Assembly (NCBI GenBank): GCA_001179505.1
Contig: CDMY01000456.1
Coordinates: 1-64,000 of the forward strand
DNA: 64,000 nt
DNA from: Vitrella brassicaformis CCMP3155
Lineage: Eukaryota; Protista; Chromerida
Reading direction: 5' to 3'
The position numbers were made by a program, and so were the translations under genes. The notes under the pieces were generated by a model. It searched no databases. It had not been told where the DNA came from and saw nothing but the letters and a program-made list of their open reading frames with translations. Shown here one piece after another: positions 1 to 62,830 of the stretch. Every line of letters begins with the position of its first letter. The stretch's first letter is position 1.

Positions 1-204
1 GTCAGCGGCGTCGGAGATGGTCGGCCGCACGTTCTTTTTCTTTTTCGCCCCCTCTCCCTTTTCTTTCAGCCCCGCCCCCCGTCGCAGCCTCTTCCGATCC
101 CTCTCGCCCTCTCTCCCAGCCCCCCAGTGACCACCACCACTATCACCACCATGCCAACCCACCCCAACCCGATCGTCGGCATCTGACCACCCTTCCTTCT
201 GCTA

Positions 205-3006
205 ATGGCCGTGTGTGTGGCTCGACCGAGCATGTGTTTGACCTGGACCCAACCTCCCCCCCTCACCAGCCCCGCAGCGCCCGTCTCCCGCCCACCCCTC
301 TGGACCCAAGCTGTGTCATTGTCCCCGCCGCCGAAAGGCACGTCACACGACGAGTCGGCTACACGCACAGAGGGCGCAGACAAGACAGCTGTGGAGACCC
401 AGATGGTGGTCGAGCACTATGAGGAGGACCAGGAGGCCCGACAGGCGCGCGAGGCTGCCACTGCGGCTCGACCACGCCGGGCAAGCAGCCGCCGACCCGC
501 TACGGCATTTCGCGCGCCATTGACCAGGCCAATGTGGAGATCGCCATTCGCAAGGACGGCCTGATCCGGCCCAATATGGCTGTCGACGAGAGGAGGGCAG
601 AGGCGATGGGGACGAGCCAGGCGACGACATGCTGCCGGCCCAGCTGCAACTTCACGGCATCCTTTCAGTCCACCGACCCCCCCAGCCCATCGCACACTGC
701 ACCGCCCGTCCGCGGTAGCACCATGCACACCAGCACCCAGCAGTCCACTAAGACGACAGGCCGCATCGGCAGCGGCATGACCATCATGGAAGGCACGCTG
801 GTCGGCGTGCGCTCGAGCAAGGGCGGCGTGGACGACGCCTTCAGTCACGTGTCCAACAGCATCATGGCCTCAGCAGAGGAGCACAGCCCTCCCCGAAGGC
901 AGCAGCACAAGCCCACAGCCACCTGCTACACCATCGGACCCCAGATGGCCGGCTGCCACGGTCTGCTGCCCACTCGTATTCGCCACCCGTTTCCCCAGCA
1001 GCAGGTCCACCTGCCCTATGTGCCCGGGCAGCAGCAGATGCAGGAGGGCTATGGGATGCAGGAGGGGTATCACGTCGGGGCTGCTGATGCTGCAGCGGTC
1101 CGATGACGCCAAGAGGGAGCTTGAAGGCACGGTGCTATCCCCAGCCAGCCAGCGGCATCCCCCCTCCACCGAGGGCTGATGTCGCCAGGCCCCAGTTCAC
1201 CCTCAGCCGCCTCGGTCGCATCCATGGGGTCTGGCAGCGTGTCAGGGCGTCTTGGGCGGAAGGGAGGGCCTTCAGAGTGTGTGCTGACGTGTCTCGAGTG
1301 GGCCATCCGGCACCCGCCGATCTACGACCTCACGTCGCTGCGGCAGCTGCACCGCCTACTCACCTTCAACACCCTCCACCGCAAGCTCTATGGCCGCACC
1401 TCACTCTGGCCCCACTGCCCCTGCAGCTGTACCCCAGGCGCCCGGGTTACCCATCCTTCCCACACCCATTCGCTCGCCGGCCACCAGAGGAGGGGGAGGA
1501 GGAAGGCGACGTCGACGTCGACACACTGGACCGAGTCGACGTGAGGCGTGATCTGGGGGACAGGGCTTTGCCCATCGCGGCTTCACGGTCGCTGCCGCGG
1601 ACGATCATCTACCTGTATCCGTCAGTGCACCCGAGCAAGCTGCCCAGATTCCCGCCCCGACTCCGGTCGCTGCTAAGCCGGGAGATGGTTGAGCAGGTGG
1701 AGGGTGAGGGCGAGGAGATGGCGCCGTCACAGGCTGGCGAGGAGGAAACCAAGACACCATCAGCGGCGGAATCGACACAAGGTGCGGCTGGACACACCAC
1801 TAATGCGATCAATCAACATGTGACACGTGGTTCTGTTTTGTTCATTCAGCTGCTGTTGCGGATTCGTCATCACAGCCGTCTGAGGCACTCGCCAAGACAC
1901 CAATCGGCGCCCGGACGCCCATCCTCGAGAAGAGCCTCACCCCATCAGCATCCTCAGACAACCTCACCATCCAGGCGACGACAGCCACGTCAGGCTCGCC
2001 CACCAGACGGACAAGACCTCTCGGCGTCGTGCCGATCGAGAGGCCCACCACACCTTCACCATCCGCCAAGCCCATGACGGCCGACGATGAAGGCGAGAGC
2101 GGAAATACCCTGGCAGTGGGGTGTATGGGCATGGTGGCGGAGGGGGGATGGAGCAGCCGGTGCCATATGCGGGGCCGCCAATGGGACTGGAGCACACCAG
2201 CATTCATCGAGCCTTTCGCACAACATCTGAGGGTAAGCAGGGCTTGGGAGGGAGGGAGGGAGGGTGGCCATTCGTCCATCAGCCAGTCAATGGCCCTCCT
2301 CCCCCCGTCTCCCTCTCTCTTTCTCTCTTTCTCTGTGTGTGTGTGTCGGTCAGATGTGAGAACCAACATCCACGACCTGTTGTTGGCCGTCAAGAAGGGT
2401 CCCAGCACCAGCAAGCCGCTGAATGCCAACGCTCCGCCCTTCCCCGACCCCTCACTCCCCACCTACCGGCCCATCATTACCGCACTCATGAACCAAGGTA
2501 ACAACGATCTCGGCGTAGAGGCCTTGCTGCAGGAGGCCAGCAGCAGCCAGTGGTGTCAGAGCGGTGCGTGGTGGGGCGCCCCGTGCAGCCTCAAGTGTAG
2601 TGTCAAGGCAGATGGCGGTGTCGCGCCCTGCAAACGGGACATCATGTTGGCCGAGGTCAGTCAGTGAGTTAGCGAGTGGGAGAGCACAGAGACACCGAAG
2701 GATGGAATGAGGCACCTTTGGGCACCTGGTCGGTCTCTGTGTGTGTCATCACATCAGGTGTTCGGCCCTTCCCTGTTCTTCACTCCCATGCCCGAGGAGG
2801 GCCGCCAGCACACCACAACCACCACGTCGGTGATCAGCAGCAGCACCCACACCCACACCACCACCACCAACAGCCGCGCCGGCTCACGTGCCCCTCCCTG
2901 CCCGCCACCCTTCGCCCCATCTGTCGGCACCCTGGTGGCCAGCTGCGGGCTGCACCCGGCATGGGTGGACGTGCTCATGGCCCAGTGCCGTCGCTTGCCG
3001 CCATGA
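205..3006 (+). pseudogene. Fragmented hypothetical protein, low-complexity, with apparent frameshifts; possible degenerate AP2-like helix near 400-480
   Basis: Protein-like segments lie in different frames (205-564, 534-1106, 1179-1544, 2029-2667, 2757-3006), with GT-AG introns around 2232-2352 and 2656-2757. They do not splice into one clean frame. Confidence 0.3.
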
Positions 3007-3036
3007 TGGTGGAGCAGCTGACAACCAACACGGGCA

Positions 3037-3881
3037 TGGACGCTCAGCCCGTTCGTCTGTGTCACTGGACGAGCAGGGCGAGATGGAGCCGTCGGGTGAG
3101 CGCCGTTTGTGGCGCGCCGGCCGGTCACCTGGCCCGATGGTGGTGTTCATGGAGGCAGAGGAGGGCGACCAGTTGTCACTCGGCAACCGACGGGCGAGGC
3201 CATCCCGGCAGACCCGTTGGTCACAGCAGCCCACACACGAAGGCCAGCTCTACTACGAGCGAGAGACTCGGCAGCCGCCCTTCCTCCCCTCCTCAGGCGC
3301 ACCATTCGGCCACCGACCGGCGGCATCAGTGCAGACCTACCGCGCCCCTCCCTCTTCCCACCCCGCTCCCTGTGATGACAAGGCGGCTGTCGGCCACGAT
3401 GTGAGGGAGGCGGTGTCCGACAAGCCCGTCCTGCGGTGCGTCTGCTTCGACTGGTAAGTGGGTGACCCGGGCAGGTGTGCAGCGGTGTATGCACGTGCCA
3501 CTGTAATGCAATCGAGACACGGTCCCCATTGCACTGTCTTCATTCTTTTCCTCAGGTTGAGCCCTTCACGTGTCTCGCAACTTCCTTGATGCCCTCCGGC
3601 GCCGTGGTGTCCGTCTGGCGGCCGCCACAGGCAAGTACCGCCGCTTCCTCAACGTGCAGCTCGACTCCACCGGCTTCCGGCCCCTCTTCGCGGCCTCCGG
3701 TGGAAACCGGCGAACACTCGAGGAGTTCATATGTCATCTTCGGCGCTTCGGGAGATACGCACGTATGACCACACGCAAAGGATGTGCTCATCTCGCGTGT
3801 GCACATACTTGTGTGTCTCTGTCTGTGTGTGTATCTGTTTGTGTGTGTCTTTGTCTGTGTGTATAGGTGGAGGCGATTGGC
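3037..3881 (+). pseudogene. HAD-IA phosphatase (phosphoglycolate-phosphatase-like) copy 1, lacking the DGT/cap exon
   Basis: VLRCVCFDW is followed by an intron, then directly by the NFLDALRRRGVRLAAATGK exon. The roughly 400 bp DGT/cap segment seen in copies 2 and 3 is absent. The copy ends at an N gap. Confidence 0.65.
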
Positions 3882-4181
3882 NNNNNNNNNNNNNNNNNNN
3901 NNNNNNNNNNNNNNNNNNNNNNNNNNNNNNNNNNNNNNNNNNNNNNNNNNNNNNNNNNNNNNNNNNNNNNNNNNNNNNNNNNNNNNNNNNNNNNNNNNNN
4001 NNNNNNNNNNNNNNNNNNNNNNNNNNNNNNNNNNNNNNNNNNNNNNNNNNNNNNNNNNNNNNNNNNNNNNNNNNNNNNNNNNNNNNNNNNNNNNNNNNNN
4101 NNNNNNNNNNNNNNNNNNNNNNNNNNNNNNNNNNNNNNNNNNNNNNNNNNNNNNNNNNNNNNNNNNNNNNNNNNNNNNNNN
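3882..4181. other. 300-N assembly gap (others at 6336-6635, 12456-12755, 17037-17336, 28468-28767, 34499-34798, 51296-51595)
   Basis: All are exactly 300 N. Several have duplicated or homopolymer flanks, so they are placeholders of unknown size. Confidence 0.98.
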
Positions 4182-5049
4182 GGCCGGCTGTCTGGCCGTG
4201 CTGCCCTTCGAAAATCTTTGTGATGGCTGCGTGCATGTGTGTCCCTTTCCCCCTTCATGGCCTGGCTGATGACGGCTCTGCCCCTCACACTCACACACGT
4301 GTCCGCATGGCCGATGGGTTTCGTTTTCGCCTGCCTGTCCCTCTCGATTTCGTTCGTCTGGCCTGTCTGTGTGCGGCATTGCATTCTTTAGTCATTTTTA
4401 CTGTCATTTCTGACGTCATCTAGTCAGTTTTTACTCGGTGGCTGGCTGCCCGACAGACAAGGGGAGGGACGAAGAGAGAAGGAAAGCAAAGCCAAAGGCC
4501 CCCTGAAGAAGGCCGAGAGAGGGAAAAGAGAGGCCCACAAGAAGGCAATACCAAAAAGGAAATGATAGGCACTTCTTCCCTCCCCCCTCCAAGCACCGCT
4601 CCACCGACCGGTACGCAGGGCAGGGCTGTACGGACGGACATGCACTTGGCGCACACACACATGCAATGCACGGATGTCTTTGGTCGGTTGGCTGCTTCAG
4701 GTTGCGGGAAGGCCGCTGTGTGTGGTGTGGTGTGTTTGCTGCCCCGCCCGGCATGTTTGTTCATTCAGGTACACACACGCGAACACTCACAGATGTGCAC
4801 ACGTGACAGACACATGTGGTCGACCTCTCTGAGCTCCTTGTCTGTCTGTCTGTCTGCCTGTTGTCCTTCTGCAGGCCGGCTGCAGTCAGCCGCCGCCCAT
4901 TCACTCATCCATCCATCTACGGCTCCCCGCTTCTTGCCTGGGAGGAGGAAGGTACGAGACCTACACACACACACACATACACGGCGGAGGTCATCTCTCA
5001 TCTCTTGTTGTGCTCTCATGGCTGTCACGTGTGTGTGTGCAGGTGGGAG

Positions 5050-52057: not shown

Positions 52058-54885
52058 TGTGTGTAGACATGCACGACGCCCAGTTGCTGTCGGTCAAGGC
52101 CGACCAGCAGGTGTCCATGGTGGAGCACTTCAGAGAAGAACTCTCCAAATGGGACGTACAGAGACGCAACCACGTGAGCAAGACAGCCAGATGTAGGGTA
52201 GGGCCCACCCTGACTGACGTGAATTGTGTTGGTTGGCCCACCCTGACTGACGTGCAGGAGTCTAAGCTGACGGAGGAGCTGAGCGTGATGAAGCATGACC
52301 TGGACGGCTTCAGATACAACCTGGAGAGAAAAGACACCACCATACAGGGTACGGTACATAGCGCATACGCACTGTGGCTGTCTGGCTGAGGACGACGCCC
52401 TTCCCCTCTCTGGTGTGTCAGGTCTTCAGCGTGCGGTGGAGCGCGCCACCCAGGAAGTCAACCGCCTGATGGACGGCCAAGACCAACTTAGGTATGTATC
52501 CACAGCCAAAGGCCACTTACTGACTGCCCAAGGCCACCCCTTTCTCTCCCTGTGTGTCTGTGCTGTGGTTGCAGGCAGTACTCGGATGAGCGCATCGACC
52601 TCCAATCCAAGCAGCTCAGCGACTTCAGAACCGAGACAGAGGTATGTGGCTGACACACCAACAGCAAGTCCATCATGAGTACACAGAACTGTCCGTGTCC
52701 GTGTCCGTGTCTGTGTGTGTGTGTGTGTGTGCAGGTGAAGCTTGTGGCGGTGGAGACCAAACACAACGCCCTGGCGGACGAGCTCTGGGGAGAAGAAACA
52801 GGACTAGCAAAGGTCACTCAGCAACCCTCCCGCCCTCCATCTCCATCTCCATCTCCATGTCTCCCTTACTCCCTCCTGTGCAGGTGACTGGTGAGCTGAA
52901 CAAGTCCAACCAGATCGTGAGTGCGCTCAACGAGGAGGTCAAGCGCATCGCCCGCTCCAAGGCGTCCACCGCCGACTTCGAGAAGCTGCAGAGCGAGGTC
53001 AAGGACTCCATCGAGGAGTCAGCCAGCGCCGTGGCCACACTCAAAACATCCGTCAACTCGGCCGTGCAGGTCAAGTGGTGCAGAGACAGAAGAGATGTGA
53101 CATTGTGTGTGTGGTGTGTTGTGTGTATATCAGGAGGTGAAGGAGCATTTCCGCACGGCATCCAACACCATCGCCGCACACAACGCAACCATGATGCAGG
53201 GTGCGGGGCGGTGCAGTGCGCACAGGCGCACAACTACAACTACGCAGATAGACCGATATGGACACAACACAACACAACACACCCCTGGGGCTGTGTGGTT
53301 CTTATGTTTGTCAGAGGTGCGCGCGGCCTACACGGACGAGCTGACTCATGCGGCCAAGCTGCGCAACGACGTGCAGAACTTCATGCACGACACCCAGGGG
53401 GCCATGCAGAGCCTCGAAAAGACAGTCGACGGCATTCGCTCACAGACTGAGGCGATGGTCAAGGTGATGGACTGACTGCAGCAGAAAGAGACAGACAGAC
53501 AGACAGCCACACAAACATGTGTGTTGTGTGCAGGAGGTGCGGCTGGACGTGGAGGAGCTCAACAAGAAGCGCAAAAGGGACAAGGCAAACAGCGGTAGGG
53601 AGGTCGGTCGATCAGGTGGTGACATGGCACCAATATATATGTGGTGTGGTGTGGTCATTCCCTCGGTAGAGATCGAGTTGCGTCAGCTCAAGAAGCGCAT
53701 CGGCGGTGTGTACGATAACAGCGATGCCGTCCTCAAGGGCATCGAGCACATCGCCGGCGTAATGGCCATCGTCCTCGAATCAAACAAGGTCACACACACA
53801 CACATACACACAGACACAATGGCTGTGTGTGCGAGTGGGTGCATAGGCGCGCTTATGCCTCTCTGTGTCTGTCAGGTTGCGTGTGCGGTGTCCCTGCAAG
53901 ACGACGACGACCGACGGAAGGTGGCCTTGATGGGGTACAAGGAGGCGGGGCAAGGCGGGCCTTCAGCACAACAACCCGGCGCAGCACCCATAGCTCGCAA
54001 GGGCACACAGGCCGCACCAACCGTCATCTCCGTCAGTACATCGCCCTGGCAATGCCTCCACCTTTCATTGTGGTGTGGCGTGTGTCTCCCTTCCTCCCTC
54101 CCTCCCTCACTGATCAGGTTGACAATCGGTGTCTGTCGTGCAGCGGTCAGTCTGCCACCGTGCTGGCGGGGTTCAAGATGGCGTGTCTCCAGTACCACCC
54201 AGGCCCTGTGCCCTACAGCGGAAAAGTAGAGACAGACAGACAGACCACCCAGGTAGACACCACACATATGGGTGACCGACTGACTTTCAGCATTACTCTC
54301 GAGGAGAGCTCCTTGCCATCCGCAGCCAGTTGATTGAACAAGTAAGAAACCACACAGCGTGCCAGGCCTCACACACAACATGTATATATTGGGACGGGAT
54401 GCGCTGCAGGCGTCTGAGGCTCTGCATCTGGGCCCCGAGGGCCGTGGTGGCGGGCCGAGCGGCGGCATGATATTCGGCAGTGTCGCGGCTGAGGGACGAA
54501 CGGCGCCAGGCTCGGCCTCATCCGTCCAGCGGGAGCTCCTACACGCAAGCCGGTCGGTATACAAACACACACACACAGATTCCAGATCAAGACAGCAGAG
54601 ACGTGGATTCGTGCGTCACCGCTGCCTGTGTCTCGTGTGTGTCCCCCGTCCAGCAGCCTTGCTCAATACTCCCCCGGCAGCATGGGCTTCAACCTCGGTG
54701 GCGGGTCAGGCACCAGGTCCTCTGTGCACTCGAGCGCGACGTCGGGGAGCGGCGGGAGAGGGAGGGTGCCCACACCCCTCGGGCAGACTGCTGGTATGGG
54801 TGTGGGTGTGGGTGGGCTGCCCAACCTGCAGTCGGCTAGTGGTGGCAAAAGGACCACCATCGGCCCAGCCATGACGGCCAGATAG
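51688..54885 (+). CDS. Long coiled-coil hypothetical protein with a C-terminal VDNRCLSC...FKMACLQY motif
   Basis: About 16 small in-frame exons with heptad patterns and a conserved-looking Cys motif near 54120-54220. Confidence 0.7.
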
Positions 54886-55488
54886 ATGAGTAGACATATC
54901 TCTCCCTTCTCCAAACAGGAGAAGAGAGACCACACCCGTGGTGCATGCCATGCCATGCCATGGCAGGGCATGATTGTATGGGAATGCGTATGCGTATGCG
55001 TAGTGGACCCTATGTGCTCAACATGTTGTGGTTGTACTTTTGCCTTTCGTCGGATAGGGTATGCCCTCACATGAGTCACACGTTCGTTCATTGAGTAGTT
55101 AACTACATCCATCCGTCACACGCACCGCACACATGGAGAGGGAGGTGTCCATGCCATTCCATGCCCGTAGGGGCAGGCAGGTAGGCACATCACGGGGCGA
55201 TTCAAACCGTCCTTAACACTTGCTCATGAGTTGTGGCCTCATGTCTTGTGGCCGCCTGACTTAGCCATTCCCTGATGCCGTTTATCGATGACCAGTTCCA
55301 ACCAGTCACCAACAAACAGCACAAGAGAATCTGCCAAGCAGGCGACCATCAAGCGGCGTGAGACGCACACTGAGAGTTAGCTCAACACACTTGGGCAAGC
55401 AAGGCAAAACGAGCACCTCACTCGCCACCACCCCGGCCAATCCAACCCACCCCACAAGTACACGACACGCCGCACCCGCCCGCACCCG

Positions 55489-55993
55489 TCACTTGTGGGC
55501 GGCAGCGGCAGCCTCAGCGGCCGCCTTCTTCTTCCTGATGTTCCACGCCTTCTCCATCTCCTCCCGCTTCTTCTTGCCGCGGCGGTGTGTGCCAAGGCGC
55601 TTCTTGGAGAACTTGAGGGCGCGCTTCAGCGAGGCAGCCGTGCCGACCTTGATGAGCTCGATGATGCGCTTCTCGTAGGGGGCGAAGCCGGCCACTTCGC
55701 GGATGACCTCGCGGGCGATCTTGACGCGGTTGTCGGTCTTCTCCTCCCCACCCTTGCCCTTCCTCCGCTGGGAAGGCTTGGGCGGCAACTCACGCTTCGT
55801 CACGATGTAGCCACGGTCCTTCTTCCGACCGGCTGATGTGATGGCATACACACACGCACACACCGACGCACAAGCACAGAACAGCCAGCAGTAAGGGAGG
55901 GAAAGGTGTGTGCGGCAGAGATCTACTCTCCTCTTTCTGTTTTTGCGCTTATCGTCGTGTTCACTGACCTGCTATGCCCGTGTTTGTCGACAT
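55489..55993 (-). CDS. RPL36: 60S ribosomal protein L36 (eL36)
   Basis: Exon 1 (55993-55969) MSTNTGIA plus exon 2 with [20 protein letters not shown]...[24 protein letters not shown]. Confidence 0.95.
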
Positions 55994-56019
55994 CGTTCCG
56001 ACACAAGCGTTTTTCCAGT

Positions 56020-56055: not shown

Positions 56056-56197
56056 GATGGGGTGGCGGGAAAAGAAGAAGACAGAGGAAATCAACGCTTC
56101 ATTCAAGTGCCGAAGAGCCACTCATCCAAGATCTTCGGCCGCTGATTTTTGCGAGTGCAGCATTAGCTAATCTATTGCGGTGTCCGTCCGTCTATCT

Positions 56198-59100
56198 ATG
56201 TGGCTGTTCATTGCGTGCTGCCTGGCCCATTTTTGTTGCCTCTGGCAGCATGCTTTTGCCATCTCTCCATCATGGCGATCTGGCAGGCGAGCCGAGGCAA
56301 GGAGGAGATCCCAGTCAACCCTCCTGCAGCCGGCCTTCTTGCTGCAGCTGCCCAGTAGCCATGGACCGCTGCAGCTGCACATGCTGCAAAGAGGGAGGAT
56401 GCGACCTGCCGTCCATGAGAGGGCGCTGTTGGCTTTTGAGAGGCGTCGGCTGGGGAGGCCGGCTGGTTTTGGTGGCGATGATCGTTCTTCTCTTCTGCGG
56501 CTCGGGGCTGCGGGCGCGACTGCAGAGAAGCAGAGTGTCAAAATGGGAGAGGTGAGTGAGGAGGTGGCAAGACATGCACACCACACATGCATACACACAC
56601 CAGCTGCCTCACTGCGGAGGGGTGTGTGTGTGTGCAGGTGTACGAGGGTTCCATCCAGGGCGTCTTCTCCACGTATGCCTTTGTGAGGTTACCTGACGGC
56701 CGGGAGGGGTGGCTCCCGGCGACGGAGGTCAGAGCGGAAGAGAGTGACATGATCGACCTCACATCCGTGCTGCACGACGGCATGAAGCTCCCCGTCTATG
56801 TCATGGGGGAAGACGACTCCTCAGGCAGGTGGCGGGTCTCACTCAGACGGGCGGCCGACCAGCTCAGAAAGAAAGAAGAACAAGACGACGAGAGCGACGG
56901 CACCGACACCCCGGCCTTCGCGACCTCCTCTGTCGCCCCCCCACGTCAATCGTCGTCTGCGAATGTCAATGGCAGCCCCGCCCCGACTGTGTCTGGCGGT
57001 CCCTCCGCCTCTGGTGCGCGCGGCAGGTGGTCGGCGGCGTCGGCAGCAGCGATGACGCCCGAGTCTGTTGGTCTGGCGAGTGAAGTGGACGCCACTGTAG
57101 CCAGTGTTTTCCCCAGACATACCCTGCTCAAATTCGACCAAGCGTAAGGGAGGGAGGGCCGGGTGGGGTAGTCAGGGAATGGATGGATGGATGGTGTGTC
57201 TTGTGGCTTGCTGTGTCCGCGCTATGATAGGCCTGATGTGGTGGGTTTTCTGCCTGCGGTTGACTTTACGGCGCAATACGTCAAGGACATGAGAGACGTG
57301 GGTGTTGGTTGACACCGTCACAGGGGCATGATTTGACAGAGGACAAGACACATCCACACACATCTCGTGTGTGTTTGGTGCTGTCTGTCATGTCAGCATC
57401 TGAAGGAGGGGAAGCCCCTGCGCGTGGCTGTGATCAATGTCGGCTACTACAACGGCAAACTACAGGCCAAATGCTCAACGAAGTGAGTGAGCCTAAAGCC
57501 CCGTCCCGCCCCACCACACGAGACCACACCACACAACAGACGACTCCCTCTTTCCTCACTGACTCATCCATCCATCCATCCATGCATCGATTTGTCAGGC
57601 TTCTGGACCTTAACAGAAACGGCGAGGTGCAGTCCAGCCCCCCCACTCCCAGAAGAGCGTCTCTGCTCCCGGTTGTGTCTGAGGGACCCTCACGCCCCTC
57701 AGTGCTGCCCACCGTCTCTGACGGCCCGCCACCACGCCCATCACCACAGCCTTCATCGGCTGCAGCGTCATCCCCACCACGAACAGGCCCAGTGGTGAGC
57801 AGCGGCCCGTCGAGGGAGACGAGGCTGCCACAACGCGCACCGCCATCTGGGCCGTCAGAGGCGTCGGCAGCGGATGTGGAGGCCGGCAAGGTGTATGTGG
57901 GAGAGGTCAAGTCGCACCCGATGCCTCAGCTGGCGCTCATTACGCTAGAGAACGGGGCTTTTGTTTCTCTACACGCATCGGAGGTCAGTCAGTTGTCAGT
58001 GCCGCCTCTTTCTCTACTGTGATGGATGGATGGATTGATGAATGGATGGATCCGGATGTGCACATCAATCAGGTGGGGTATCGGTACGTGAGTGACATCG
58101 CCGCTGAGCTGCCTGTGGGCGAGAAGGTGCTGCTCGTGCTCAGAGAGATAGTCGAGGTCAGCGAACACATAAGACCCCACACAGTGACATGACACTGACA
58201 CGGCTGCTCTCAACTTTCGATGCATGTATGTATGCGTGTGTTGCGACCGTTTCCAGGATCGTCGCGGGCGGCCTCAGATCCGGATGACCATGAAGAGAAA
58301 CGAAGACGCCCCCATGCCACACAGAGGAGACGTACGTCAACCACAGCCAAGCAGACAAGCCCTACCTTCTTCTGTGTGGCTTTGGTTTGTGATCTTGTCC
58401 ATTCAGGAGTTTGAGGGCCGTGTGTCGCGCACAGCCAAGGACTACGTCTTTGTCAAGATGCCCAACGGCATGGTAATACTAGACCAGTCACGCTGACCAC
58501 GCAAAGCGCTGCCTCCATCCATTGGATATTGTGTGTGTGTGTGTGTGTGTGTGCAGGATGGTCTCCTTCACCGCCGTAACGTCCCGGTCTTGCGTAACAA
58601 GAGGGAACCAATGGTACGCCGTAGTACAGCCACTTGGCTGTCGAGTCGATGCTTTTCCAATGTGTGTGAGTGTGTGCGTCTTGTGCTGCCTGGCCTGCAG
58701 AGCGTGTTCTTTGACGTGTGTGACCCCGTCAAAGTCAAAGTCACCGAAGTCGAGCAAAACACCGTGAGCGAGATCCCCTCCCTCCCACTGGCACACCACT
58801 TGCGCACCATTCGCACCGCACACCCACCATATCCTCTCTCGTGTCATGCCTCCACCAGGGTCGTGGGCCGCCCTTGAAGGTTTCTCTCGAGCTGCTCGAC
58901 ATGCTTGGCGAAGAGGACATGGAGAAAGCCGAAGAGAGAGAGGGCGGGGGAGCCGAGGGCATGACAGCGGACGAGACAGAGGAGGGCGAGATCGACTTGG
59001 CTGATGTGGGTGATGATGTGGGGGCTGATGTGGACCCGTGGGCTGAGCAGGCGGCCGTGACGGACATGGGAGTGGGTATGGGGGCGGCCACTGCAGTGGG

Positions 59101-62100
59101 GCTGGGGAAGAAGAAGGCCCTCAAGAAGACGGTGAGTTAGTTAGTCGGTCGGGCAAGAGAGCTGAGCTGGGCTGTGTGCGGATGTGATGTACCTCTGTGT
59201 CTGTCTGTGTACCTTTGTCCGTCAGGACGCCAAGAGGAACGACGACGCGAAATACAAGAAGAAGCCGAAAAGGAGACTGGTACTGCATTCAGCCATGCGA
59301 CGGATACATACACATGCATCCTCTAATCTCCGTGTGATGTCTGTCGATGTCCGATTATCTGTCTGTCTGTCTGCAGAAGGACGACTACAGCAGCCACGAC
59401 GACCTCGCCAACTTTGAGAACGAAGACGAGGAAGCCGAAATGGTCCGCAAAATGGAACGAATCGCCGAAAAGAAACTCAAAAAGTAAGCTGCCCCTCCCC
59501 CTCCCCCTCCCCGTCCCCCACTCGCTCTCTCACCACACACATGATGATGATGATGATGTTGTCTGTCTGCAGGATGCGCAAGGAGCGAGAAGAGCGAATG
59601 CCCGAAGGCCAGAAGCCGGTGGTCATCCCTCTGGGTCAGGTGCTGACGGTCGGACAGGTGGCCGACAAGCTCGACGTGGGGTCGGCGGCGGTGGTCAAGC
59701 ACCTGATGCTGCAGGAGGGCGTCATGGCCAACGCCATGGCACCGCTGCAAAGGGATATGGCCGTCAAGGTCGTTGAGGCCTTCGGGCGGGAGGTGGCTGA
59801 GACGGATGAGGTCGAGGACGACGAGGCGCAGCTCTATGACGAAGAAGAGGCCAGGGTGAGACCGACCGATACACATGGGGGGCGGGCGGACGGTTCCAAT
59901 CTGTCTGTGTGTGTGTGTGTGTGTGTGCAGTTACTAGAGGAGCTGCAGCAGAAGGAGGACGACCCCGCCTCCCTCAAGCCCCGCCCGCCCATCATCACCA
60001 TCATGGGCCACGTCGACCACGGCAAGACCTCTCTCCTCGACGCCATCCGATCCACCACAGTGGCAGCCAAGGAGGCCGGCGGCATCACCCAGCACATCGG
60101 CGCCTACACCGTCAAGGGCCCCTCGGGCGACAGCCTCACCTTCATCGACACCCCCGGGCACGCTGCCTTCTCGCAGATGCGCAGCAGGGGCGCCAATGTG
60201 ACGGATGTGGTGGTGCTGGTGGTGGCGGCTGACGACTCGGTCATGGAGCAGACGAGGGAGTCGATACGCATGTGCCGGGCGGCGGGGGTGCCGGTTGTTG
60301 TCGCCATCACCAAGATCGACAAGCCAGAGGCGAACCCTGATTCGGTCATCGGCGACCTGGCCAGCGAAGAGATCGTTGTCGAGGATCTCGGGGGCGATAT
60401 TCAATGCGCCAGGTCGGTAGGGTACACACATACACTCACTGTGCCCTGCCCTGTTCGTTCACCTGACTGGTGCGTGGTCTCTGTGTGTCGTCAGGGTGTC
60501 GGCAATGACGAAGGATGGCCTTGACGACTTGCTTGAGAAGCTGGCCTTCTCTGCAGAGATCATGGACCTCAAAGCCAACCCCGATCGGCCAGCCTCGGGC
60601 ACCGTCCTGGAAGCCTCCGTCGAGCAGGGCCTCGGCGTTGTCGCAACTACACTCATACAACGAGGCACACTCAGGTATCCTTGACGCCCCCCCACACCCA
60701 CACCCTCACCGCCATACACCCTTTTTTCGAGCTCCTTTTGTCAGGGTGGGCGACATCGTTGTTGCTGGCGGTGCGTACGGCAAGATCCGCGCCCTTCGGG
60801 ACTGGCAGGGTCGGCCGATCAAGGAGGCGGGCCCGTCGGAGCCGGTGCAGGTGGTTGGCATCAACAGGGAGGTCCTGCCCTCTGCCGGCGACCCATTGGA
60901 GGTGGTCGACACGGAGTTCCAGGCCAAGGCGCTCGCAGAGGTGCGGCGGAAGATCACCTCGACGGCAGAGGGGGCCGGCAGGTTCGGCAGCCTGCTCTCG
61001 GAAACCGTTGCCACCATTGCTGGGGTGAGTGAGCCAGGAGGGAGAGGAGGGTCTGTCTGTATTCTTTGTGAGGTGTGCATGTGCATGGTGTGTGTCGCGT
61101 GGACGGATGGATGGCTGATGGATGGGATGCAGGAGAATGGCGATTCCAAGGAGCTGACGGTTGTGGTCAAGGCGGACGTGCAGGGGTCGGCAGAGGCCGT
61201 GTCCAACTGGTGAGTGGAGTGGATGTGAGTGGATGGAGGACGGGCAATGCACACACAGCACAGGACAGGACAGATCCTTCTTCCATCCATCTGAGAATTG
61301 GATGTGTGTGGCTGTGCTGGTCGGTTCGGTTCATTCATTCAGTGTGGGTGGTCTGTTCAAGGAGGACCCCACTGGCAAGGCGACCGTCAAGGTCGTCCTG
61401 GCTGAGGCGGGACCAGTCACCAAAGTAGGCAGGGAGAGATGCATGGAATGGACGCCAGCCAACACAGCACAGCACAGCACACAACAGACGCACTCGGGGT
61501 GTGTTGTGCGTATGGGGTGGTGGCTGGCTGTTATGTGTGCGCAGACTGACGTGGTGACGGCGTCTGTGGGGAGGGGTCTGATCATCGCCTTCAATGTCGG
61601 CATCAATGATGACGCTAAGGTCAGTCAGTCACCGAACGCACACATGCGCCTGCCCAGACCGACATCATTGTCTCTCCCTCTCTCTCTCTCTCTATGTGCG
61701 TCTGTGTGCAGAGGGCAGCTGCTGACCTCGGCCTTCCCCTCTTCCACTGTCGAATAGTCTACGAAGGTGACCATCAATCACATCACACAAATCCATGCAC
61801 CAACAGAGAGAGATTTTTCCATTTCCATGTATGGCTGGCCCTTCTCTTGTGCAGCGATCAAGGAGGTAGAGAGCAGGTTAGAGCGGATCCTGAGCCCCAC
61901 TCCCGAAGGCGAGTATGCGGGCGCCGCAGAGGTCAAGCAGGTGTTCGTCGTCGGCAAGAAGGGCAAGGTCGCCGGCTGCATCGTGACTGACGGCGTCATG
62001 AAGAAGGGCGCTAACGTCAGGATACTCAGGCCGAAACCGGGCGCAGGCAGCGAGATCGTATACATGGTCAGCCCAGCCCACACGAGAGAGAGAGAGAGAG

Positions 62101-62320
62101 CGGCGCGAAAGAAATCCAATGGCCGCATTTGCGTGTCCTTTGCGTGTGTGTGTGTGTGCAGGGTCGGTTGCGGTCTCTGCGTCACATTAAGGAGGAGGTT
62201 GGCGAGATGGAGTCAGGCCGCGAGTGCGGCATGGCCTTCGACGACTTCGAAGACATGCAGTCAGGAGACATCATTGAGTGCTATGTCGACTCCAAGTCGG
62301 CAATAAGACAGCTGACGTGA
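56198..62320 (+). CDS. infB: Plastid-targeted fusion protein: four S1 domains plus bacterial-type translation initiation factor IF2
   Basis: Bipartite leader, four S1 folds, IF2_N ([10 protein letters not shown]...), G-domain [24 protein letters not shown] and C-terminal ECGM...GDIIECY. All junctions from ATG to IF2_N were checked by hand as GT-AG, phase-compatible and stop-free. Confidence 0.88.
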
Positions 62321-62830
62321 TGACTGACGTGTGTGAGGGTGTCAATGTGGCTATGTTGTGTTCGTATGTGTCTGTGTGAGGACCCCCGCGCTCGTGTGTC
62401 ATCAGATGAGCTTGTGAGTTGCCACACAGCTTTATGTACGTGTGTGTCACTTGACAACGGCCTAAGGTTTGGCAGTCGAATCGATCGGCTGTGTCCTCTC
62501 ACTCCGTTCGGTCAATGCCATCCCATCCACCATGCACAATCAGTCCACCGCTTCCACGCCTGGCTGGAGAAGGAGGTCCAGCACTCTGCGTACCACACCA
62601 GTCATGGTACACACACACCAAATCCACCTAATACACAGCGGAAAACGGACTAGAAAAAGCCACCGGGTCCCAGAAAAAACGGGCCACGTGAGCAAAATAT
62701 GGTACATGTCGCACACAGTGAAGAGAGAAGGCGGCCAATACACACACACACACCCACACACACCCACACACACACACACATGCACCACAGAACCAACTAC
62801 GGAACAAGTCGCTCATCCACCAGCGTCCCC

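What the first reader, a model, noticed from the sequence alone, without database searches (positions are those of the whole stretch)
56198..62320. Tetra-S1 - IF2 fusion: a candidate plastid translation-initiation polyprotein
Seen in sequence: splicing exons 56198-56551, 56638-57143, 57231-57297, 57397-57482, 57599-57983, 58073-58156, 58257-58331, 58407-58472, 58557-58613, 58701-58763, 58859-59131, 59226-59279, 59377-59483 and 59573 onward gives one stop-free frame. It carries four S1 domains ([29 protein letters not shown]; [29 protein letters not shown]; [10 protein letters not shown]...[17 protein letters not shown]; [29 protein letters not shown]) ahead of a complete IF2. Established: bacterial and organellar IF2 normally has no S1 repeats. 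The closest precedent I know is green-lineage PETs, where S1-containing PSRP-7 is fused to EF-Ts, not IF2. Inference: a ribosomal-protein-S1-like mRNA-capturing module is tethered to IF2 to couple mRNA recruitment with fMet-tRNA loading. I know of no description of this fusion.
Basis: partly seen in the sequence, partly recalled or inferred. Interest (0 to 1): 0.92.

Follow-up and report, generated by a model that had tools for sequence, protein, structure and literature searches.

The report
Four S1 domains fused to plastid IF2
The alga Vitrella brassicaformis really does express one gene joining four RNA-binding S1 domains to a complete bacterial-type translation initiation factor IF2, probably sent to the plastid; the layout is listed in public databases, but I found it in no other organism and in no paper.

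Summary
A 23-exon gene (window 56198-62320, + strand) encodes a 1353-aa protein. One 4648-nt transcript contig (L001) holds the whole 4062-nt CDS without a mismatch, with the critical 59483/59573 intron spliced out.

The protein reads as follows:
- Residues 1-21 look like a signal peptide.
- Residues 22-115 are Arg-rich and look like a transit peptide.
- Four divergent S1 domains follow. Two pass Pfam's cut-off and two fall below it, but those two have S1 as best Pfam match and hit S1 domains in the PDB (repeat 2 also in a fold search).
- A 157-aa charged linker follows.
- The rest is a full IF2 (NCBIfam IF-2, 606 bits against a cut-off of 424).

The gene is already public as CEM14468.1 / A0A0G4FL05, named only "IF-2, chloroplastic". 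Both public models are cut short at the N-terminus and miss the signal peptide. None of the 119 closest IF2 relatives carries S1. No relative of the S1 module was found, and no paper describes the fusion.

Cleavage into two proteins and the proposed mechanism remain untested. I rate it a new variant of a known kind, of moderate interest.

The parts
56066..62774 (+). mRNA span: 132-nt 5'UTR, 23 exons, about 454-nt 3'UTR. The 3' end is extrapolated from the contig length.
   Evidence: L001 transcript contig of 4648 nt starts at window 56066 and holds the CDS at 133-4194. The X8 contig starts at 56086.
56198..62320 (+). CDS of 4062 nt in 23 exons, giving 1353 aa. Exons: 56198-56551, 56638-57143, 57231-57297, 57397-57482, 57599-57983, 58073-58156, 58257-58331, 58407-58472, 58557-58613, 58701-58763, 58859-59131, 59226-59279, 59377-59483, 59573-59855, 59931-60412, 60495-60674, 60745-61024, 61133-61209, 61343-61424, 61545-61619, 61712-61766, 61855-62066, 62162-62320.
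   Evidence: Public model P0125 equals residues 62-1353.
56198..56260 (+). Residues 1-21, a hydrophobic signal-peptide-like start ([21 protein letters not shown]).
   Evidence: Mean Kyte-Doolittle hydropathy is 2.19 over residues 1-15. This is the first AUG of the mRNA, the 5'UTR has no ATG, and there is an in-frame TAA at 56168. No predictor such as SignalP was available.
56261..56542 (+). Residues 22-115, an Arg-rich transit-peptide-like stretch with few acidic residues.
   Evidence: 16 Arg against 6 Asp+Glu in 94 residues. A 9-nt in-frame indel between L001 and L002 keeps the frame open here and removes M62.
56543..56853 (+). S1 domain 1 (residues 116-190), split by intron 1.
   Evidence: Pfam S1 23.7 bits, E 6.5e-5. 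PDB hits are the PNPase S1 domain, GSP13 and bS1.
57067..57620 (+). S1 domain 2 (residues 262-345), the most degenerate, spread over exons 2-5.
   Evidence: Pfam S1 15.6 bits, E 0.021, and the best family listed. The best PDB sequence hit is the aIF2-alpha S1 domain, E 3e-4. An AlphaFold2 model made with a 12-row S1 alignment has pLDDT 91.5 and a five-strand barrel. Foldseek's top matches are S1 domains with TM 0.75-0.82.
57876..58295 (+). S1 domain 3 (residues 431-507), exons 5-7.
   Evidence: Pfam S1 16.7 bits, E 0.0097, and the only family listed. PDB hits are GSP13 (E 8e-4), the PNPase S1 domain and spinach chloroplast S1.
58323..58891 (+). S1 domain 4 (residues 517-592), exons 7-11, the best conserved.
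   Evidence: Pfam S1 37.1 bits, E 4.3e-9. The best PDB hit is E. coli bS1 residues 276-339, E 1.5e-10.
58892..59642 (+). Linker, residues 593-749: an acidic block, a Gly/Ala/Met-rich patch, then a Lys-rich block and a charged helix-like stretch. It holds the introns at 59131/59226, 59279/59377 and 59483/59573.
   Evidence: Composition over residues 593-745 is 41 Asp+Glu and 29 Lys+Arg in 153 residues. No Pfam family matches (protein 5). The joints are seen in RNA contigs.
59643..59792 (+). IF2_N domain (residues 750-799).
   Evidence: Pfam PF04760, 30.2 bits on the exon alone. BLASTP similarity to diatom IF2 starts here.
59991..60543 (+). GTPase (G) domain of IF2 (residues 841-997). G1 GHVDHGKT and G3 DTPGH are intact. 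G4 reads TKID instead of NKID, with the Thr codon at 60309-60311.
   Evidence: Pfam GTP_EFTU 117 bits. Alignment with 119 relatives.
60589..60904 (+). IF2 domain II (residues 1013-1094).
   Evidence: Pfam EF-G_D2 81.2 bits.
61133..61871 (+). IF-2 C1 domain (residues 1135-1236).
   Evidence: Pfam PF11987 74.5 bits.
61962..62275 (+). IF2 C2 domain (residues 1267-1339), which binds fMet-tRNA in bacterial IF2 (my knowledge). The ECG motif is present.
   Evidence: Pfam GTP_EFTU_D2 35.3 bits. NCBIfam IF-2 covers profile positions 4-580 of 587.

Best explanation
This is one nuclear gene of Vitrella brassicaformis. It is transcribed and spliced into a single mRNA that encodes a 1353-aa protein. The protein has a two-part leader (signal peptide plus transit-like peptide) that most likely sends it to the four-membrane plastid. 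Four divergent S1 (OB-fold) RNA-binding domains follow, then a 157-residue charged linker, then a complete bacterial-type IF2.

My reading is that the S1 array takes the place of the variable N-terminal extension found in other IF2 proteins. That extension is rich in Arg-Gly (RGG) repeats in the closest diatom relatives. The protein would then act mainly as one chain. The IF2 core loads fMet-tRNA and joins the subunits on the plastid 30S. The flexible S1 arm holds single-stranded, probably A/U-rich, plastid mRNA (or 16S rRNA) close to the start site, as the mRNA-binding domains of ribosomal protein bS1 do.

Shown: the gene structure, the fused mRNA, the identity of the domains, and the absence of S1 from the nearest IF2 relatives. 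Inferred: plastid location (about 0.75), RNA binding by the S1 array, and action as one uncut chain (about 0.45, against about 0.25 for cleavage).
For: - Fused mRNA: the spliced contigs. L001 holds the exact 4062-nt CDS, and L002 agrees.
- S1 domains: Pfam gives 69.6 bits for the whole protein and lists S1 as the best family for each of the four pieces. All four pieces hit S1 domains of solved structures. They align in the same order as canonical S1 repeats. The model of repeat 2 has an S1 fold.
- IF2: NCBIfam IF-2 equivalog scores 606 bits against a cut-off of 424. 155 of 170 columns that are at least 95% conserved are kept.
- Targeting: the first AUG of the mRNA opens a hydrophobic 21-mer followed by an Arg-rich stretch. 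The in-frame 9-nt indel keeps this part coding. The best eukaryotic relatives are diatom IF2s with a signal peptide followed by Phe at the predicted cleavage site. Chromerid plastid proteins need a two-part targeting sequence (PMC6723311).
- RNA contig depth in runs X1 and X2 rises inside the S1 part, between 58156 and 58859, not at the S1/IF2 border. That fits 3' bias rather than a separate IF2 transcript.
- Background: bS1 recruits mRNA at initiation (PMC4288201 abstract). [quoted passage not shown]
Against: - There are no protein-level data, so size, location and RNA binding are untested.
- No targeting predictor could be run.
- Repeats 1 and 2 lack the conserved His of canonical S1 domains, and repeat 2 also lacks the aromatic pair, so some repeats may not bind RNA.
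- The G4 motif is TKID rather than NKID, which might change nucleotide handling.
- The IF2 part scores as close to alphaproteobacterial IF2 as to diatom IF2, and the tree does not place it. Ancestry therefore does not settle the compartment.
- The closest precedent, PETs, is cleaved in Chlamydomonas.
- Contigs drop rare isoforms, so S1-only or IF2-only mRNAs are not excluded.
Confidence: 0.6

Rival explanations
1. Polyprotein, like Chlamydomonas PETs. The precursor is imported and cut in the linker. This gives a free four-S1 protein, which acts as a plastid ribosomal or ribosome-associated S1-like factor, and a free IF2 of ordinary size. The fusion would only ensure co-expression and co-import.
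For: - PETs, which joins two S1 domains to EF-Ts, is processed into PSRP-7 and EF-Ts in Chlamydomonas (PMC8343077).
- The linker of 157 residues is long, highly charged and matches no domain family, so it is probably unstructured and exposed.
- Similarity to diatom IF2 starts only at residue 750. A cut upstream of that would leave a normal IF2.
Against: No cleavage site or protease is known here. The Arabidopsis PETs homologue is mostly not processed, so the precedent points both ways. There are no proteomic data.
Confidence: 0.25
2. Two products made at the RNA level. Retention of intron 13 (59484-59572) places a TAA right after the exon (AAG TAA) and would give an S1-only protein of 726 aa. 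An internal start would give IF2 alone.
For: The in-frame TAA at 59485-59487 is read directly from the sequence. An ATG-rich stretch and Met727 lie at the start of exon 14.
Against: In runs X1, X2 and X7 the depth of the 59400-59599 bin equals exactly the exonic share (0.555 times the contig depth), so no contig covers the intron. Any phase-2 intron that starts GTAA gives such a stop, so the stop is not special. An IF2 starting at Met727 would have no targeting leader.
Confidence: 0.07
3. One of the S1-like OB folds stands in for IF1, the A-site OB-fold factor, in the way the insertion in mammalian mitochondrial IF2 replaces IF1.
For: IF1 and S1 share the OB fold (my knowledge). IF2 and IF1 sit next to each other on the 30S (my knowledge).
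Against: None of the four repeats gave a Pfam match to the IF1/eIF-1a family, even at E up to 1. Their best matches are bS1, PNPase, GSP13 and aIF2-alpha S1 domains. Whether Vitrella has its own infA gene was not checked.
Confidence: 0.04
4. Artefact: two neighbouring genes joined by a wrong gene model or by a chimeric assembly.
For: Contig assemblers can join overlapping transcripts. Both public gene models of this locus are inexact at the 5' end.
Against: A GT..AG intron is removed exactly between the two parts and keeps the frame. This is seen in contigs of three runs and in two independent assemblies. Only 89 nt separate the parts. The IF2 part alone would have no targeting leader.
Confidence: 0.02

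Closest known systems
Bacterial-type and plastid IF2 (infB; NCBIfam TIGR00487; plant cIF2, ochrophyte plastid-targeted IF2)
   Same: The core architecture is complete: IF2_N, G domain, domain II, C1 and C2. It scores 606 bits against the equivalog cut-off of 424. It is 47-50% identical over about 600 residues to diatom IF2s that carry plastid-type leaders.
   Different: The N-terminal extension is an array of four S1 domains. The diatom relatives have RGG-rich low-complexity extensions instead, and the alphaproteobacterial relatives carry PF08364. None of the 119 best relatives has PF00575. The G4 motif is TKID instead of NKID.
PETs / PSRP-7 / EMB2726 (plastid polyprotein of EF-Ts: two S1 domains fused to EF-Ts)
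   Same: It is a nuclear-encoded plastid translation factor with S1 RNA-binding domains fused at its N-terminus (PMC8343077).
   Different: The partner is the initiation GTPase IF2, not the exchange factor EF-Ts. There are four S1 domains rather than two. No sequence relatedness of the S1 parts was shown. Processing is unknown here.
Ribosomal protein bS1 (rpsA) and chloroplast PRPS1
   Same: It has tandem S1 domains. Repeat 4 is most like the fourth S1 domain (residues 276-339) of E. coli bS1, which I recall as an mRNA-binding domain (E 1.5e-10). Repeat 3 weakly hits spinach chloroplast S1.
   Different: It fails the rpsA equivalog model (38 bits against 577). The order of best matches does not follow the domain order of bS1. 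No N-terminal ribosome-anchoring segment was looked for or seen. Here the anchor would be IF2 itself (inference).
Small stand-alone S1 proteins (GSP13 / CvfD / YabR type; bacterial proteins with three S1 repeats, P0003-P0005)
   Same: These are the best family-level and sequence-level matches of repeats 1 and 3.
   Different: The scores are far below the family cut-offs (69.6 against 148). Those proteins are single-domain or three-domain proteins without a GTPase.

Membership tests
Bacterial-type translation initiation factor IF2 | Full-length match to the IF-2 equivalog model above its curated cut-off | tested here: met
   TIGR00487 scores 606.2 bits against a cut-off of 424.4, covering profile positions 4-580 of 587.
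Bacterial-type translation initiation factor IF2 | Domain set IF2_N, G domain, domain II, IF-2 (C1) and C2 | tested here: met
   PF04760 30.2 bits on the exon alone. PF00009 117, PF22042 81.2, PF11987 74.5 and PF03144 35.3 bits.
Bacterial-type translation initiation factor IF2 | Canonical GTP-binding motifs G1, G3 and G4 (NKxD) | tested here: inconclusive
   G1 GHVDHGKT and G3 DTPGH are intact. G4 reads TKID, while all 119 relatives have N at that position. The effect on nucleotide binding is unknown.
S1 RNA-binding domain (Pfam PF00575) | Match above the gathering score | tested here: met
   The whole protein scores 69.6 bits (cut-off 22). Repeat 1 scores 23.7 and repeat 4 scores 37.1. Repeats 2 and 3 score 15.6 and 16.7, below the cut-off, but S1 is their best family and the match covers nearly the whole profile.
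S1 RNA-binding domain (Pfam PF00575) | Five-strand OB barrel of the S1 type | tested here: met
   Tested for repeat 2 only. The AlphaFold2 model has pLDDT 91.5. Foldseek's top PDB matches are all S1 domains, with TM 0.75-0.82. Caveat: the input alignment was made of S1 domains, so the model leans that way. The single-sequence model of all four repeats was unusable.
S1 RNA-binding domain (Pfam PF00575) | Conserved RNA-contact residues (aromatic pair, His, Arg). The residue roles are from my memory of the PNPase S1 structure. | tested here: inconclusive
   Repeat 4 keeps Tyr, Phe, His and Arg. Repeat 1 keeps Tyr, Phe and Arg but has Pro for His. Repeat 3 keeps His and Arg but not the aromatics. 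Repeat 2 keeps only a Lys.
Ribosomal protein bS1 (rpsA) | Match to an rpsA equivalog model above its cut-off, with S1 domains in the same order | tested here: not met
   TIGR00717 scores 38 bits against 577, and the other rpsA models are also far below their cut-offs. Repeat 4 matches bS1 domain 4 while repeat 1 matches domain 6, so the order differs.
PETs (S1 plus EF-Ts polyprotein) | EF-Ts domain(s) C-terminal to the S1 domains | tested here: not met
   No EF-Ts family appears among the Pfam matches. The C-terminal part is IF2. The resemblance is in design only.
PETs (S1 plus EF-Ts polyprotein) | Post-translational cleavage into two proteins | not testable with these tools
   This needs westerns or proteomics.
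Plastid-targeted protein of a complex red plastid | Two-part leader: ER signal peptide followed by a transit peptide | tested here: inconclusive
   The start is a hydrophobic 21-mer followed by an Arg-rich, acid-poor stretch of 94 residues. The requirement for such a leader is taken from PMC6723311. No SignalP, ASAFind or TargetP was available.

The most novel reading that the evidence does not exclude
The S1 arm gives the plastid IF2 its own mRNA selectivity. One possibility is that it replaces a missing ribosomal bS1 in the chromerid plastid. A more striking one is that it binds the 3' poly(U) tails that mark photosynthesis transcripts in Vitrella plastids (PMC3894158). Initiation would then be coupled to tail status, a bacterial-type counterpart of the PABP-eIF4G closed loop. 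Nothing in my evidence excludes either, and nothing tests them.
Probability: 0.12. Interest if true: 0.85.

Novelty: new variant of a known kind. Interest (0 to 1): 0.55.

Why it matters
How organellar and bacterial ribosomes find start sites on mRNAs with weak or no Shine-Dalgarno signals is usually put down to bS1 on the ribosome. Here an S1 array sits on the initiation factor instead. That would be a natural experiment in moving mRNA capture from the ribosome to IF2. It would also be a second, independent case, after PETs, of plastids fusing S1 domains to a translation factor.

It gives a concrete handle on translation control in the plastid of the closest photosynthetic relatives of apicomplexan parasites. 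The limits are clear. It is one lineage-specific gene in a genome where other notes of this scan report further lineage-specific fusions (not checked here). The protein sequence is already public, and no function has been tested.

Tried and rejected
- AlphaFold2 on residues 116-605 without an alignment gave pLDDT 36 and was unusable.
- An hhalign run of my S1 alignment against repeat 3 gave 98.9% probability, but repeat 3 is itself a row of that alignment. The result is circular and I do not use it.
- A FastTree of the IF2 core with 119 relatives put the Vitrella protein on its own branch between the diatom clade and the alphaproteobacteria. There was no outgroup, so nothing can be said about cyanobacterial or mitochondrial ancestry.
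- Two ESM Atlas searches returned only ordinary IF2 clusters and say nothing about S1+IF2 layouts.
- Three searches for relatives of the S1 module gave no orthologue:
  - The sensitive search with exon 2 found only the protein itself, three small bacterial S1 proteins, and one chance match on the motif DGREGW.
  - The word-index search with residues 1-620 of public model P0001 found only the protein itself.
  - The word-index search with residues 1-490 as a stand-alone query found nothing.
- In the PDB search with repeat 1, the top hits (designed 'Scone' and 'Cake' propeller proteins) are matches to a short motif, not homology.
- Joints listed in table 5c (for example 57194 to 59356, and 58679 to 62141) lie in GT/CA microsatellites inside introns. 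I read them as cross-matches.
- Six literature searches found no description of an S1-IF2 fusion.

Full report
**1.

The IF2 part "from 59573 onward" is not one exon but ten. I fixed their borders from RNA contigs and from the reading frame. The complete model has 23 exons, 4062 nt and 1353 codons, and ends at the TGA at 62318-62320.

RNA contigs of four public runs show the GT..AG joints. In runs X1, X7 and X8 a single contig runs from exon 11 (58859-59130) into exon 14 (59573-59855). Exactly 162 letters lie between the two pieces. That is the 1+54+107 nt expected if exons 12 and 13 are present and the 59484-59572 intron is removed.

The direct test came when the look-up of the public protein fetched two transcript contigs.
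- L001 (Logan SRR646408, 4648 nt) holds my whole CDS as an exact, unbroken string at positions 133-4194.
- L002 (JGI 3300017297, 4335 nt) aligns to the window exon by exon with the same borders.
- Run X3 holds the same DNA unspliced and is the genomic control.

A splice that removes 89 nt and keeps the frame between the two halves cannot come from two separate genes. The artefact reading is excluded.

**2. What the protein is**

*IF2 half.* Pfam finds IF2_N, GTP_EFTU, EF-G_D2, IF-2 and GTP_EFTU_D2 in the right order. The NCBIfam IF-2 equivalog model scores 606 bits against a cut-off of 424 and covers positions 4-580 of 587. I aligned the core with its 119 best relatives. Of the 170 columns that are at least 95% conserved, the protein keeps 155. 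One of the 15 departures is notable: the G4 motif reads TKID where every relative has NKID.

*S1 half.* Pfam gives S1 69.6 bits for the whole protein. I then scanned the four repeats one at a time.

| Repeat | Bits | E-value |
|---|---|---|
| 1 | 23.7 | 6.5e-5 |
| 2 | 15.6 | 0.021 |
| 3 | 16.7 | 0.0097 |
| 4 | 37.1 | 4.3e-9 |

The gathering score is 22, so repeats 1 and 4 pass it and repeats 2 and 3 fall below it. For repeats 2 and 3, S1 is still the best family listed, and the match covers almost the whole profile. These E-values are corrected for 24,736 families. For the single hypothesis "S1" they correspond to p below 1e-6 (my arithmetic).

An independent library agrees. Against sequences of solved structures:
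- Repeat 1 hits the PNPase S1 domain, GSP13 and bS1.
- Repeat 2 hits the S1 domain of aIF2-alpha (E 3e-4) and Rrp5.
- Repeat 3 hits GSP13 (E 8e-4), PNPase and spinach chloroplast S1.
- Repeat 4 hits residues 276-339 of E. coli bS1 (E 1.5e-10).

All four repeats align in the same order as canonical bacterial S1 repeats. They are only 17-28% identical to each other, so they are old repeats and not a recent duplication.

Repeat 2 is the weakest. I modelled it with a 12-row S1 alignment. The model has pLDDT 91.5 and forms a five-strand barrel. Its best Foldseek matches in the PDB are all S1 domains: a/eIF2-alpha, bS1 D3-D4, Chlamydomonas chlororibosome bS1 and GSP13, with TM 0.75-0.82. The alignment was made of S1 domains, so this model leans towards that fold.

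The module is not an orthologue of ribosomal protein S1. The rpsA model scores 38 bits against a cut-off of 577.

*Linker.* The linker spans residues 593-749. It has an acidic block, a Gly/Ala/Met-rich patch and a Lys-rich block, and it matches no family.

**3. The N-terminus and the likely compartment**

The RNA contigs start at 56066 and 56086. The 132-nt leader has no ATG, and an in-frame TAA lies at 56168. The ATG at 56198 is therefore the first AUG of the mRNA.

It opens with a hydrophobic 21-mer ([21 protein letters not shown]). A stretch of 94 residues follows with 16 Arg and only 6 acidic residues. That is the pattern of the two-part leader that chromerid plastid proteins need (PMC6723311).

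The two transcript assemblies differ by a 9-nt in-frame indel inside this leader. The indel deletes Met62. A 3n indel fits coding sequence, and it removes the very start codon used by the NCBI model. Both public models miss the signal peptide: P0125 starts at Met62 and P0001 at Met116.

The best eukaryotic relatives of the IF2 half are diatom proteins, at 47-50% identity. Four of the six whose sequences I read start with a signal peptide followed by Phe at the predicted cleavage site, which I recall as the diatom plastid signature.

I put plastid targeting at about 0.75. No predictor could be run.

**4. Distribution**

Among the 120 best IF2 hits out of 5.8 billion proteins, only the query itself carries PF00575.

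The S1 half found no orthologue in three searches:
- The sensitive search of 1.84 billion cluster representatives with exon 2 returned the protein itself, three small bacterial three-S1 proteins and one chance match.
- The word-index search with the whole S1 half, restricted to long candidate proteins, returned only the protein itself.
- The word-index search with the S1 half as a stand-alone query returned nothing.

Orthologues with a repeat 1 that is less than about 35% identical could have been missed. "Found only in Vitrella" is therefore supported but not proven.

The N-terminal extensions of the diatom relatives are RGG-rich. That fits the idea that plastid IF2 extensions tend to be RNA-binding. 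This is an inference.

**5. Public record and literature**

The 90% cluster of the protein holds CEM14468.1 / UniRef100_A0A0G4FL05, "Translation initiation factor IF-2, chloroplastic", from Vitrella brassicaformis CCMP3155. It has 1292 aa and is identical to residues 62-1353 of my model. The fused sequence, and its precomputed S1 and IF2 Pfam marks, are therefore already public.

Six full-text searches found no description of an S1-IF2 fusion.
- A 2026 preprint that surveys IF2 terminal extensions across life uses 12 eukaryotic sequences. It mentions S1 only as a domain of NusA.
- The 2015 survey of translational GTPases left the apicoplast-specific subfamilies out of its superfamily tree because they are very divergent.

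**6. How it most likely works**

Established background:
- bS1 recruits mRNA and helps place it in the decoding centre (PMC4288201 abstract).
- PETs joins two S1 domains to EF-Ts. It is cleaved in Chlamydomonas but mostly not in Arabidopsis (PMC8343077).

From this I infer that the S1 array is an RNA-holding arm on IF2. The long linker would let it reach mRNA at the 30S platform while the IF2 core does its usual work.

Repeat 4 keeps Tyr, Phe, His and Arg at the canonical contact positions. Repeat 1 keeps most of them. Repeats 2 and 3 are degenerate. The residue roles are from my memory of the PNPase S1 structure.

The main rival is cleavage into two proteins (about 0.25). RNA-level separation by retention of intron 13 is possible in principle, because a TAA follows the exon at once. 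However, in runs X1, X2 and X7 the depth over that bin equals exactly the exonic share, so no contig covers the intron. Contigs do drop rare forms. In X1 and X2 the depth rises inside the S1 part rather than at the border, which fits 3' bias.

The boldest reading not excluded is that the arm reads the poly(U) tails of Vitrella plastid photosynthesis transcripts (PMC3894158), or stands in for a missing bS1.

**7. Verdict**

The architecture is a new variant of known kinds: an IF2 with a new type of N-terminal extension, and a design parallel to PETs. It is present in databases but, as far as I could search, undescribed. Function, processing and location remain to be tested.

Other agents' notes of this scan name the same organism, which one search confirms. 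They also mention another plastid-targeted S1 fusion in this genome (s1-226953), which I did not test.

Noticed in passing
window 60309-60320 (residues 947-950): The G4 guanine-specificity motif of the IF2 GTPase reads TKID instead of NKID. All 119 closest relatives have Asn at this position, and the RNA contigs confirm the codon. This may change nucleotide affinity or specificity.
   Followed up: partly
window 56198-56551; L001 against L002: Both public gene models are cut short at the 5' end. CEM14468.1 starts at Met62 and the JGI model at Met116, so both lose the signal-peptide-like first 21 residues. A 9-nt in-frame indel between two transcript assemblies deletes Met62 (window 56381-56383).
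   Followed up: yes
window 55076-56013, minus strand: A highly expressed, spliced gene for cytosolic ribosomal protein eL36 (Pfam Ribosomal_L36e, 92.7 bits) lies head-to-head with the S1-IF2 gene. Its intron is at 55833-55968. The ends of the two sets of RNA contigs are only about 52 bp apart (56013 and 56066), so the two genes probably share a very short divergent promoter region.
   Followed up: partly
P0001 residues 611-1238 against the database: The best bacterial matches of this IF2, and of the diatom plastid-targeted IF2s, are alphaproteobacterial at 46-47% identity. No cyanobacterial IF2 is named among the best 120 hits. The ancestry of IF2 in red-lineage complex plastids may not be cyanobacterial. 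The tree had no outgroup, so this is unresolved.
   Followed up: partly
P0006, P0011, P0019, P0035 (diatom IF2 relatives): In the diatom relatives I read, the IF2 extension (after the plastid-type leader where the model is complete) is a long Arg-Gly (RGG-like) and Asn-rich low-complexity region. This is a different, possibly also RNA-binding, solution at the place where Vitrella has S1 domains.
   Followed up: no
window 54341-55050, plus strand: Another spliced transcript lies just upstream. Its joints are at 54341/54410 and 54551/54656, with an alternative acceptor at 54653. It was not identified.
   Followed up: no
window 57177-57199, 59356-59375, 62100-62160: GT/CA microsatellites inside introns attract many unrelated contigs. 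They produce false long-range 'joints' and depth spikes when reads are laid on the window.
   Followed up: partly
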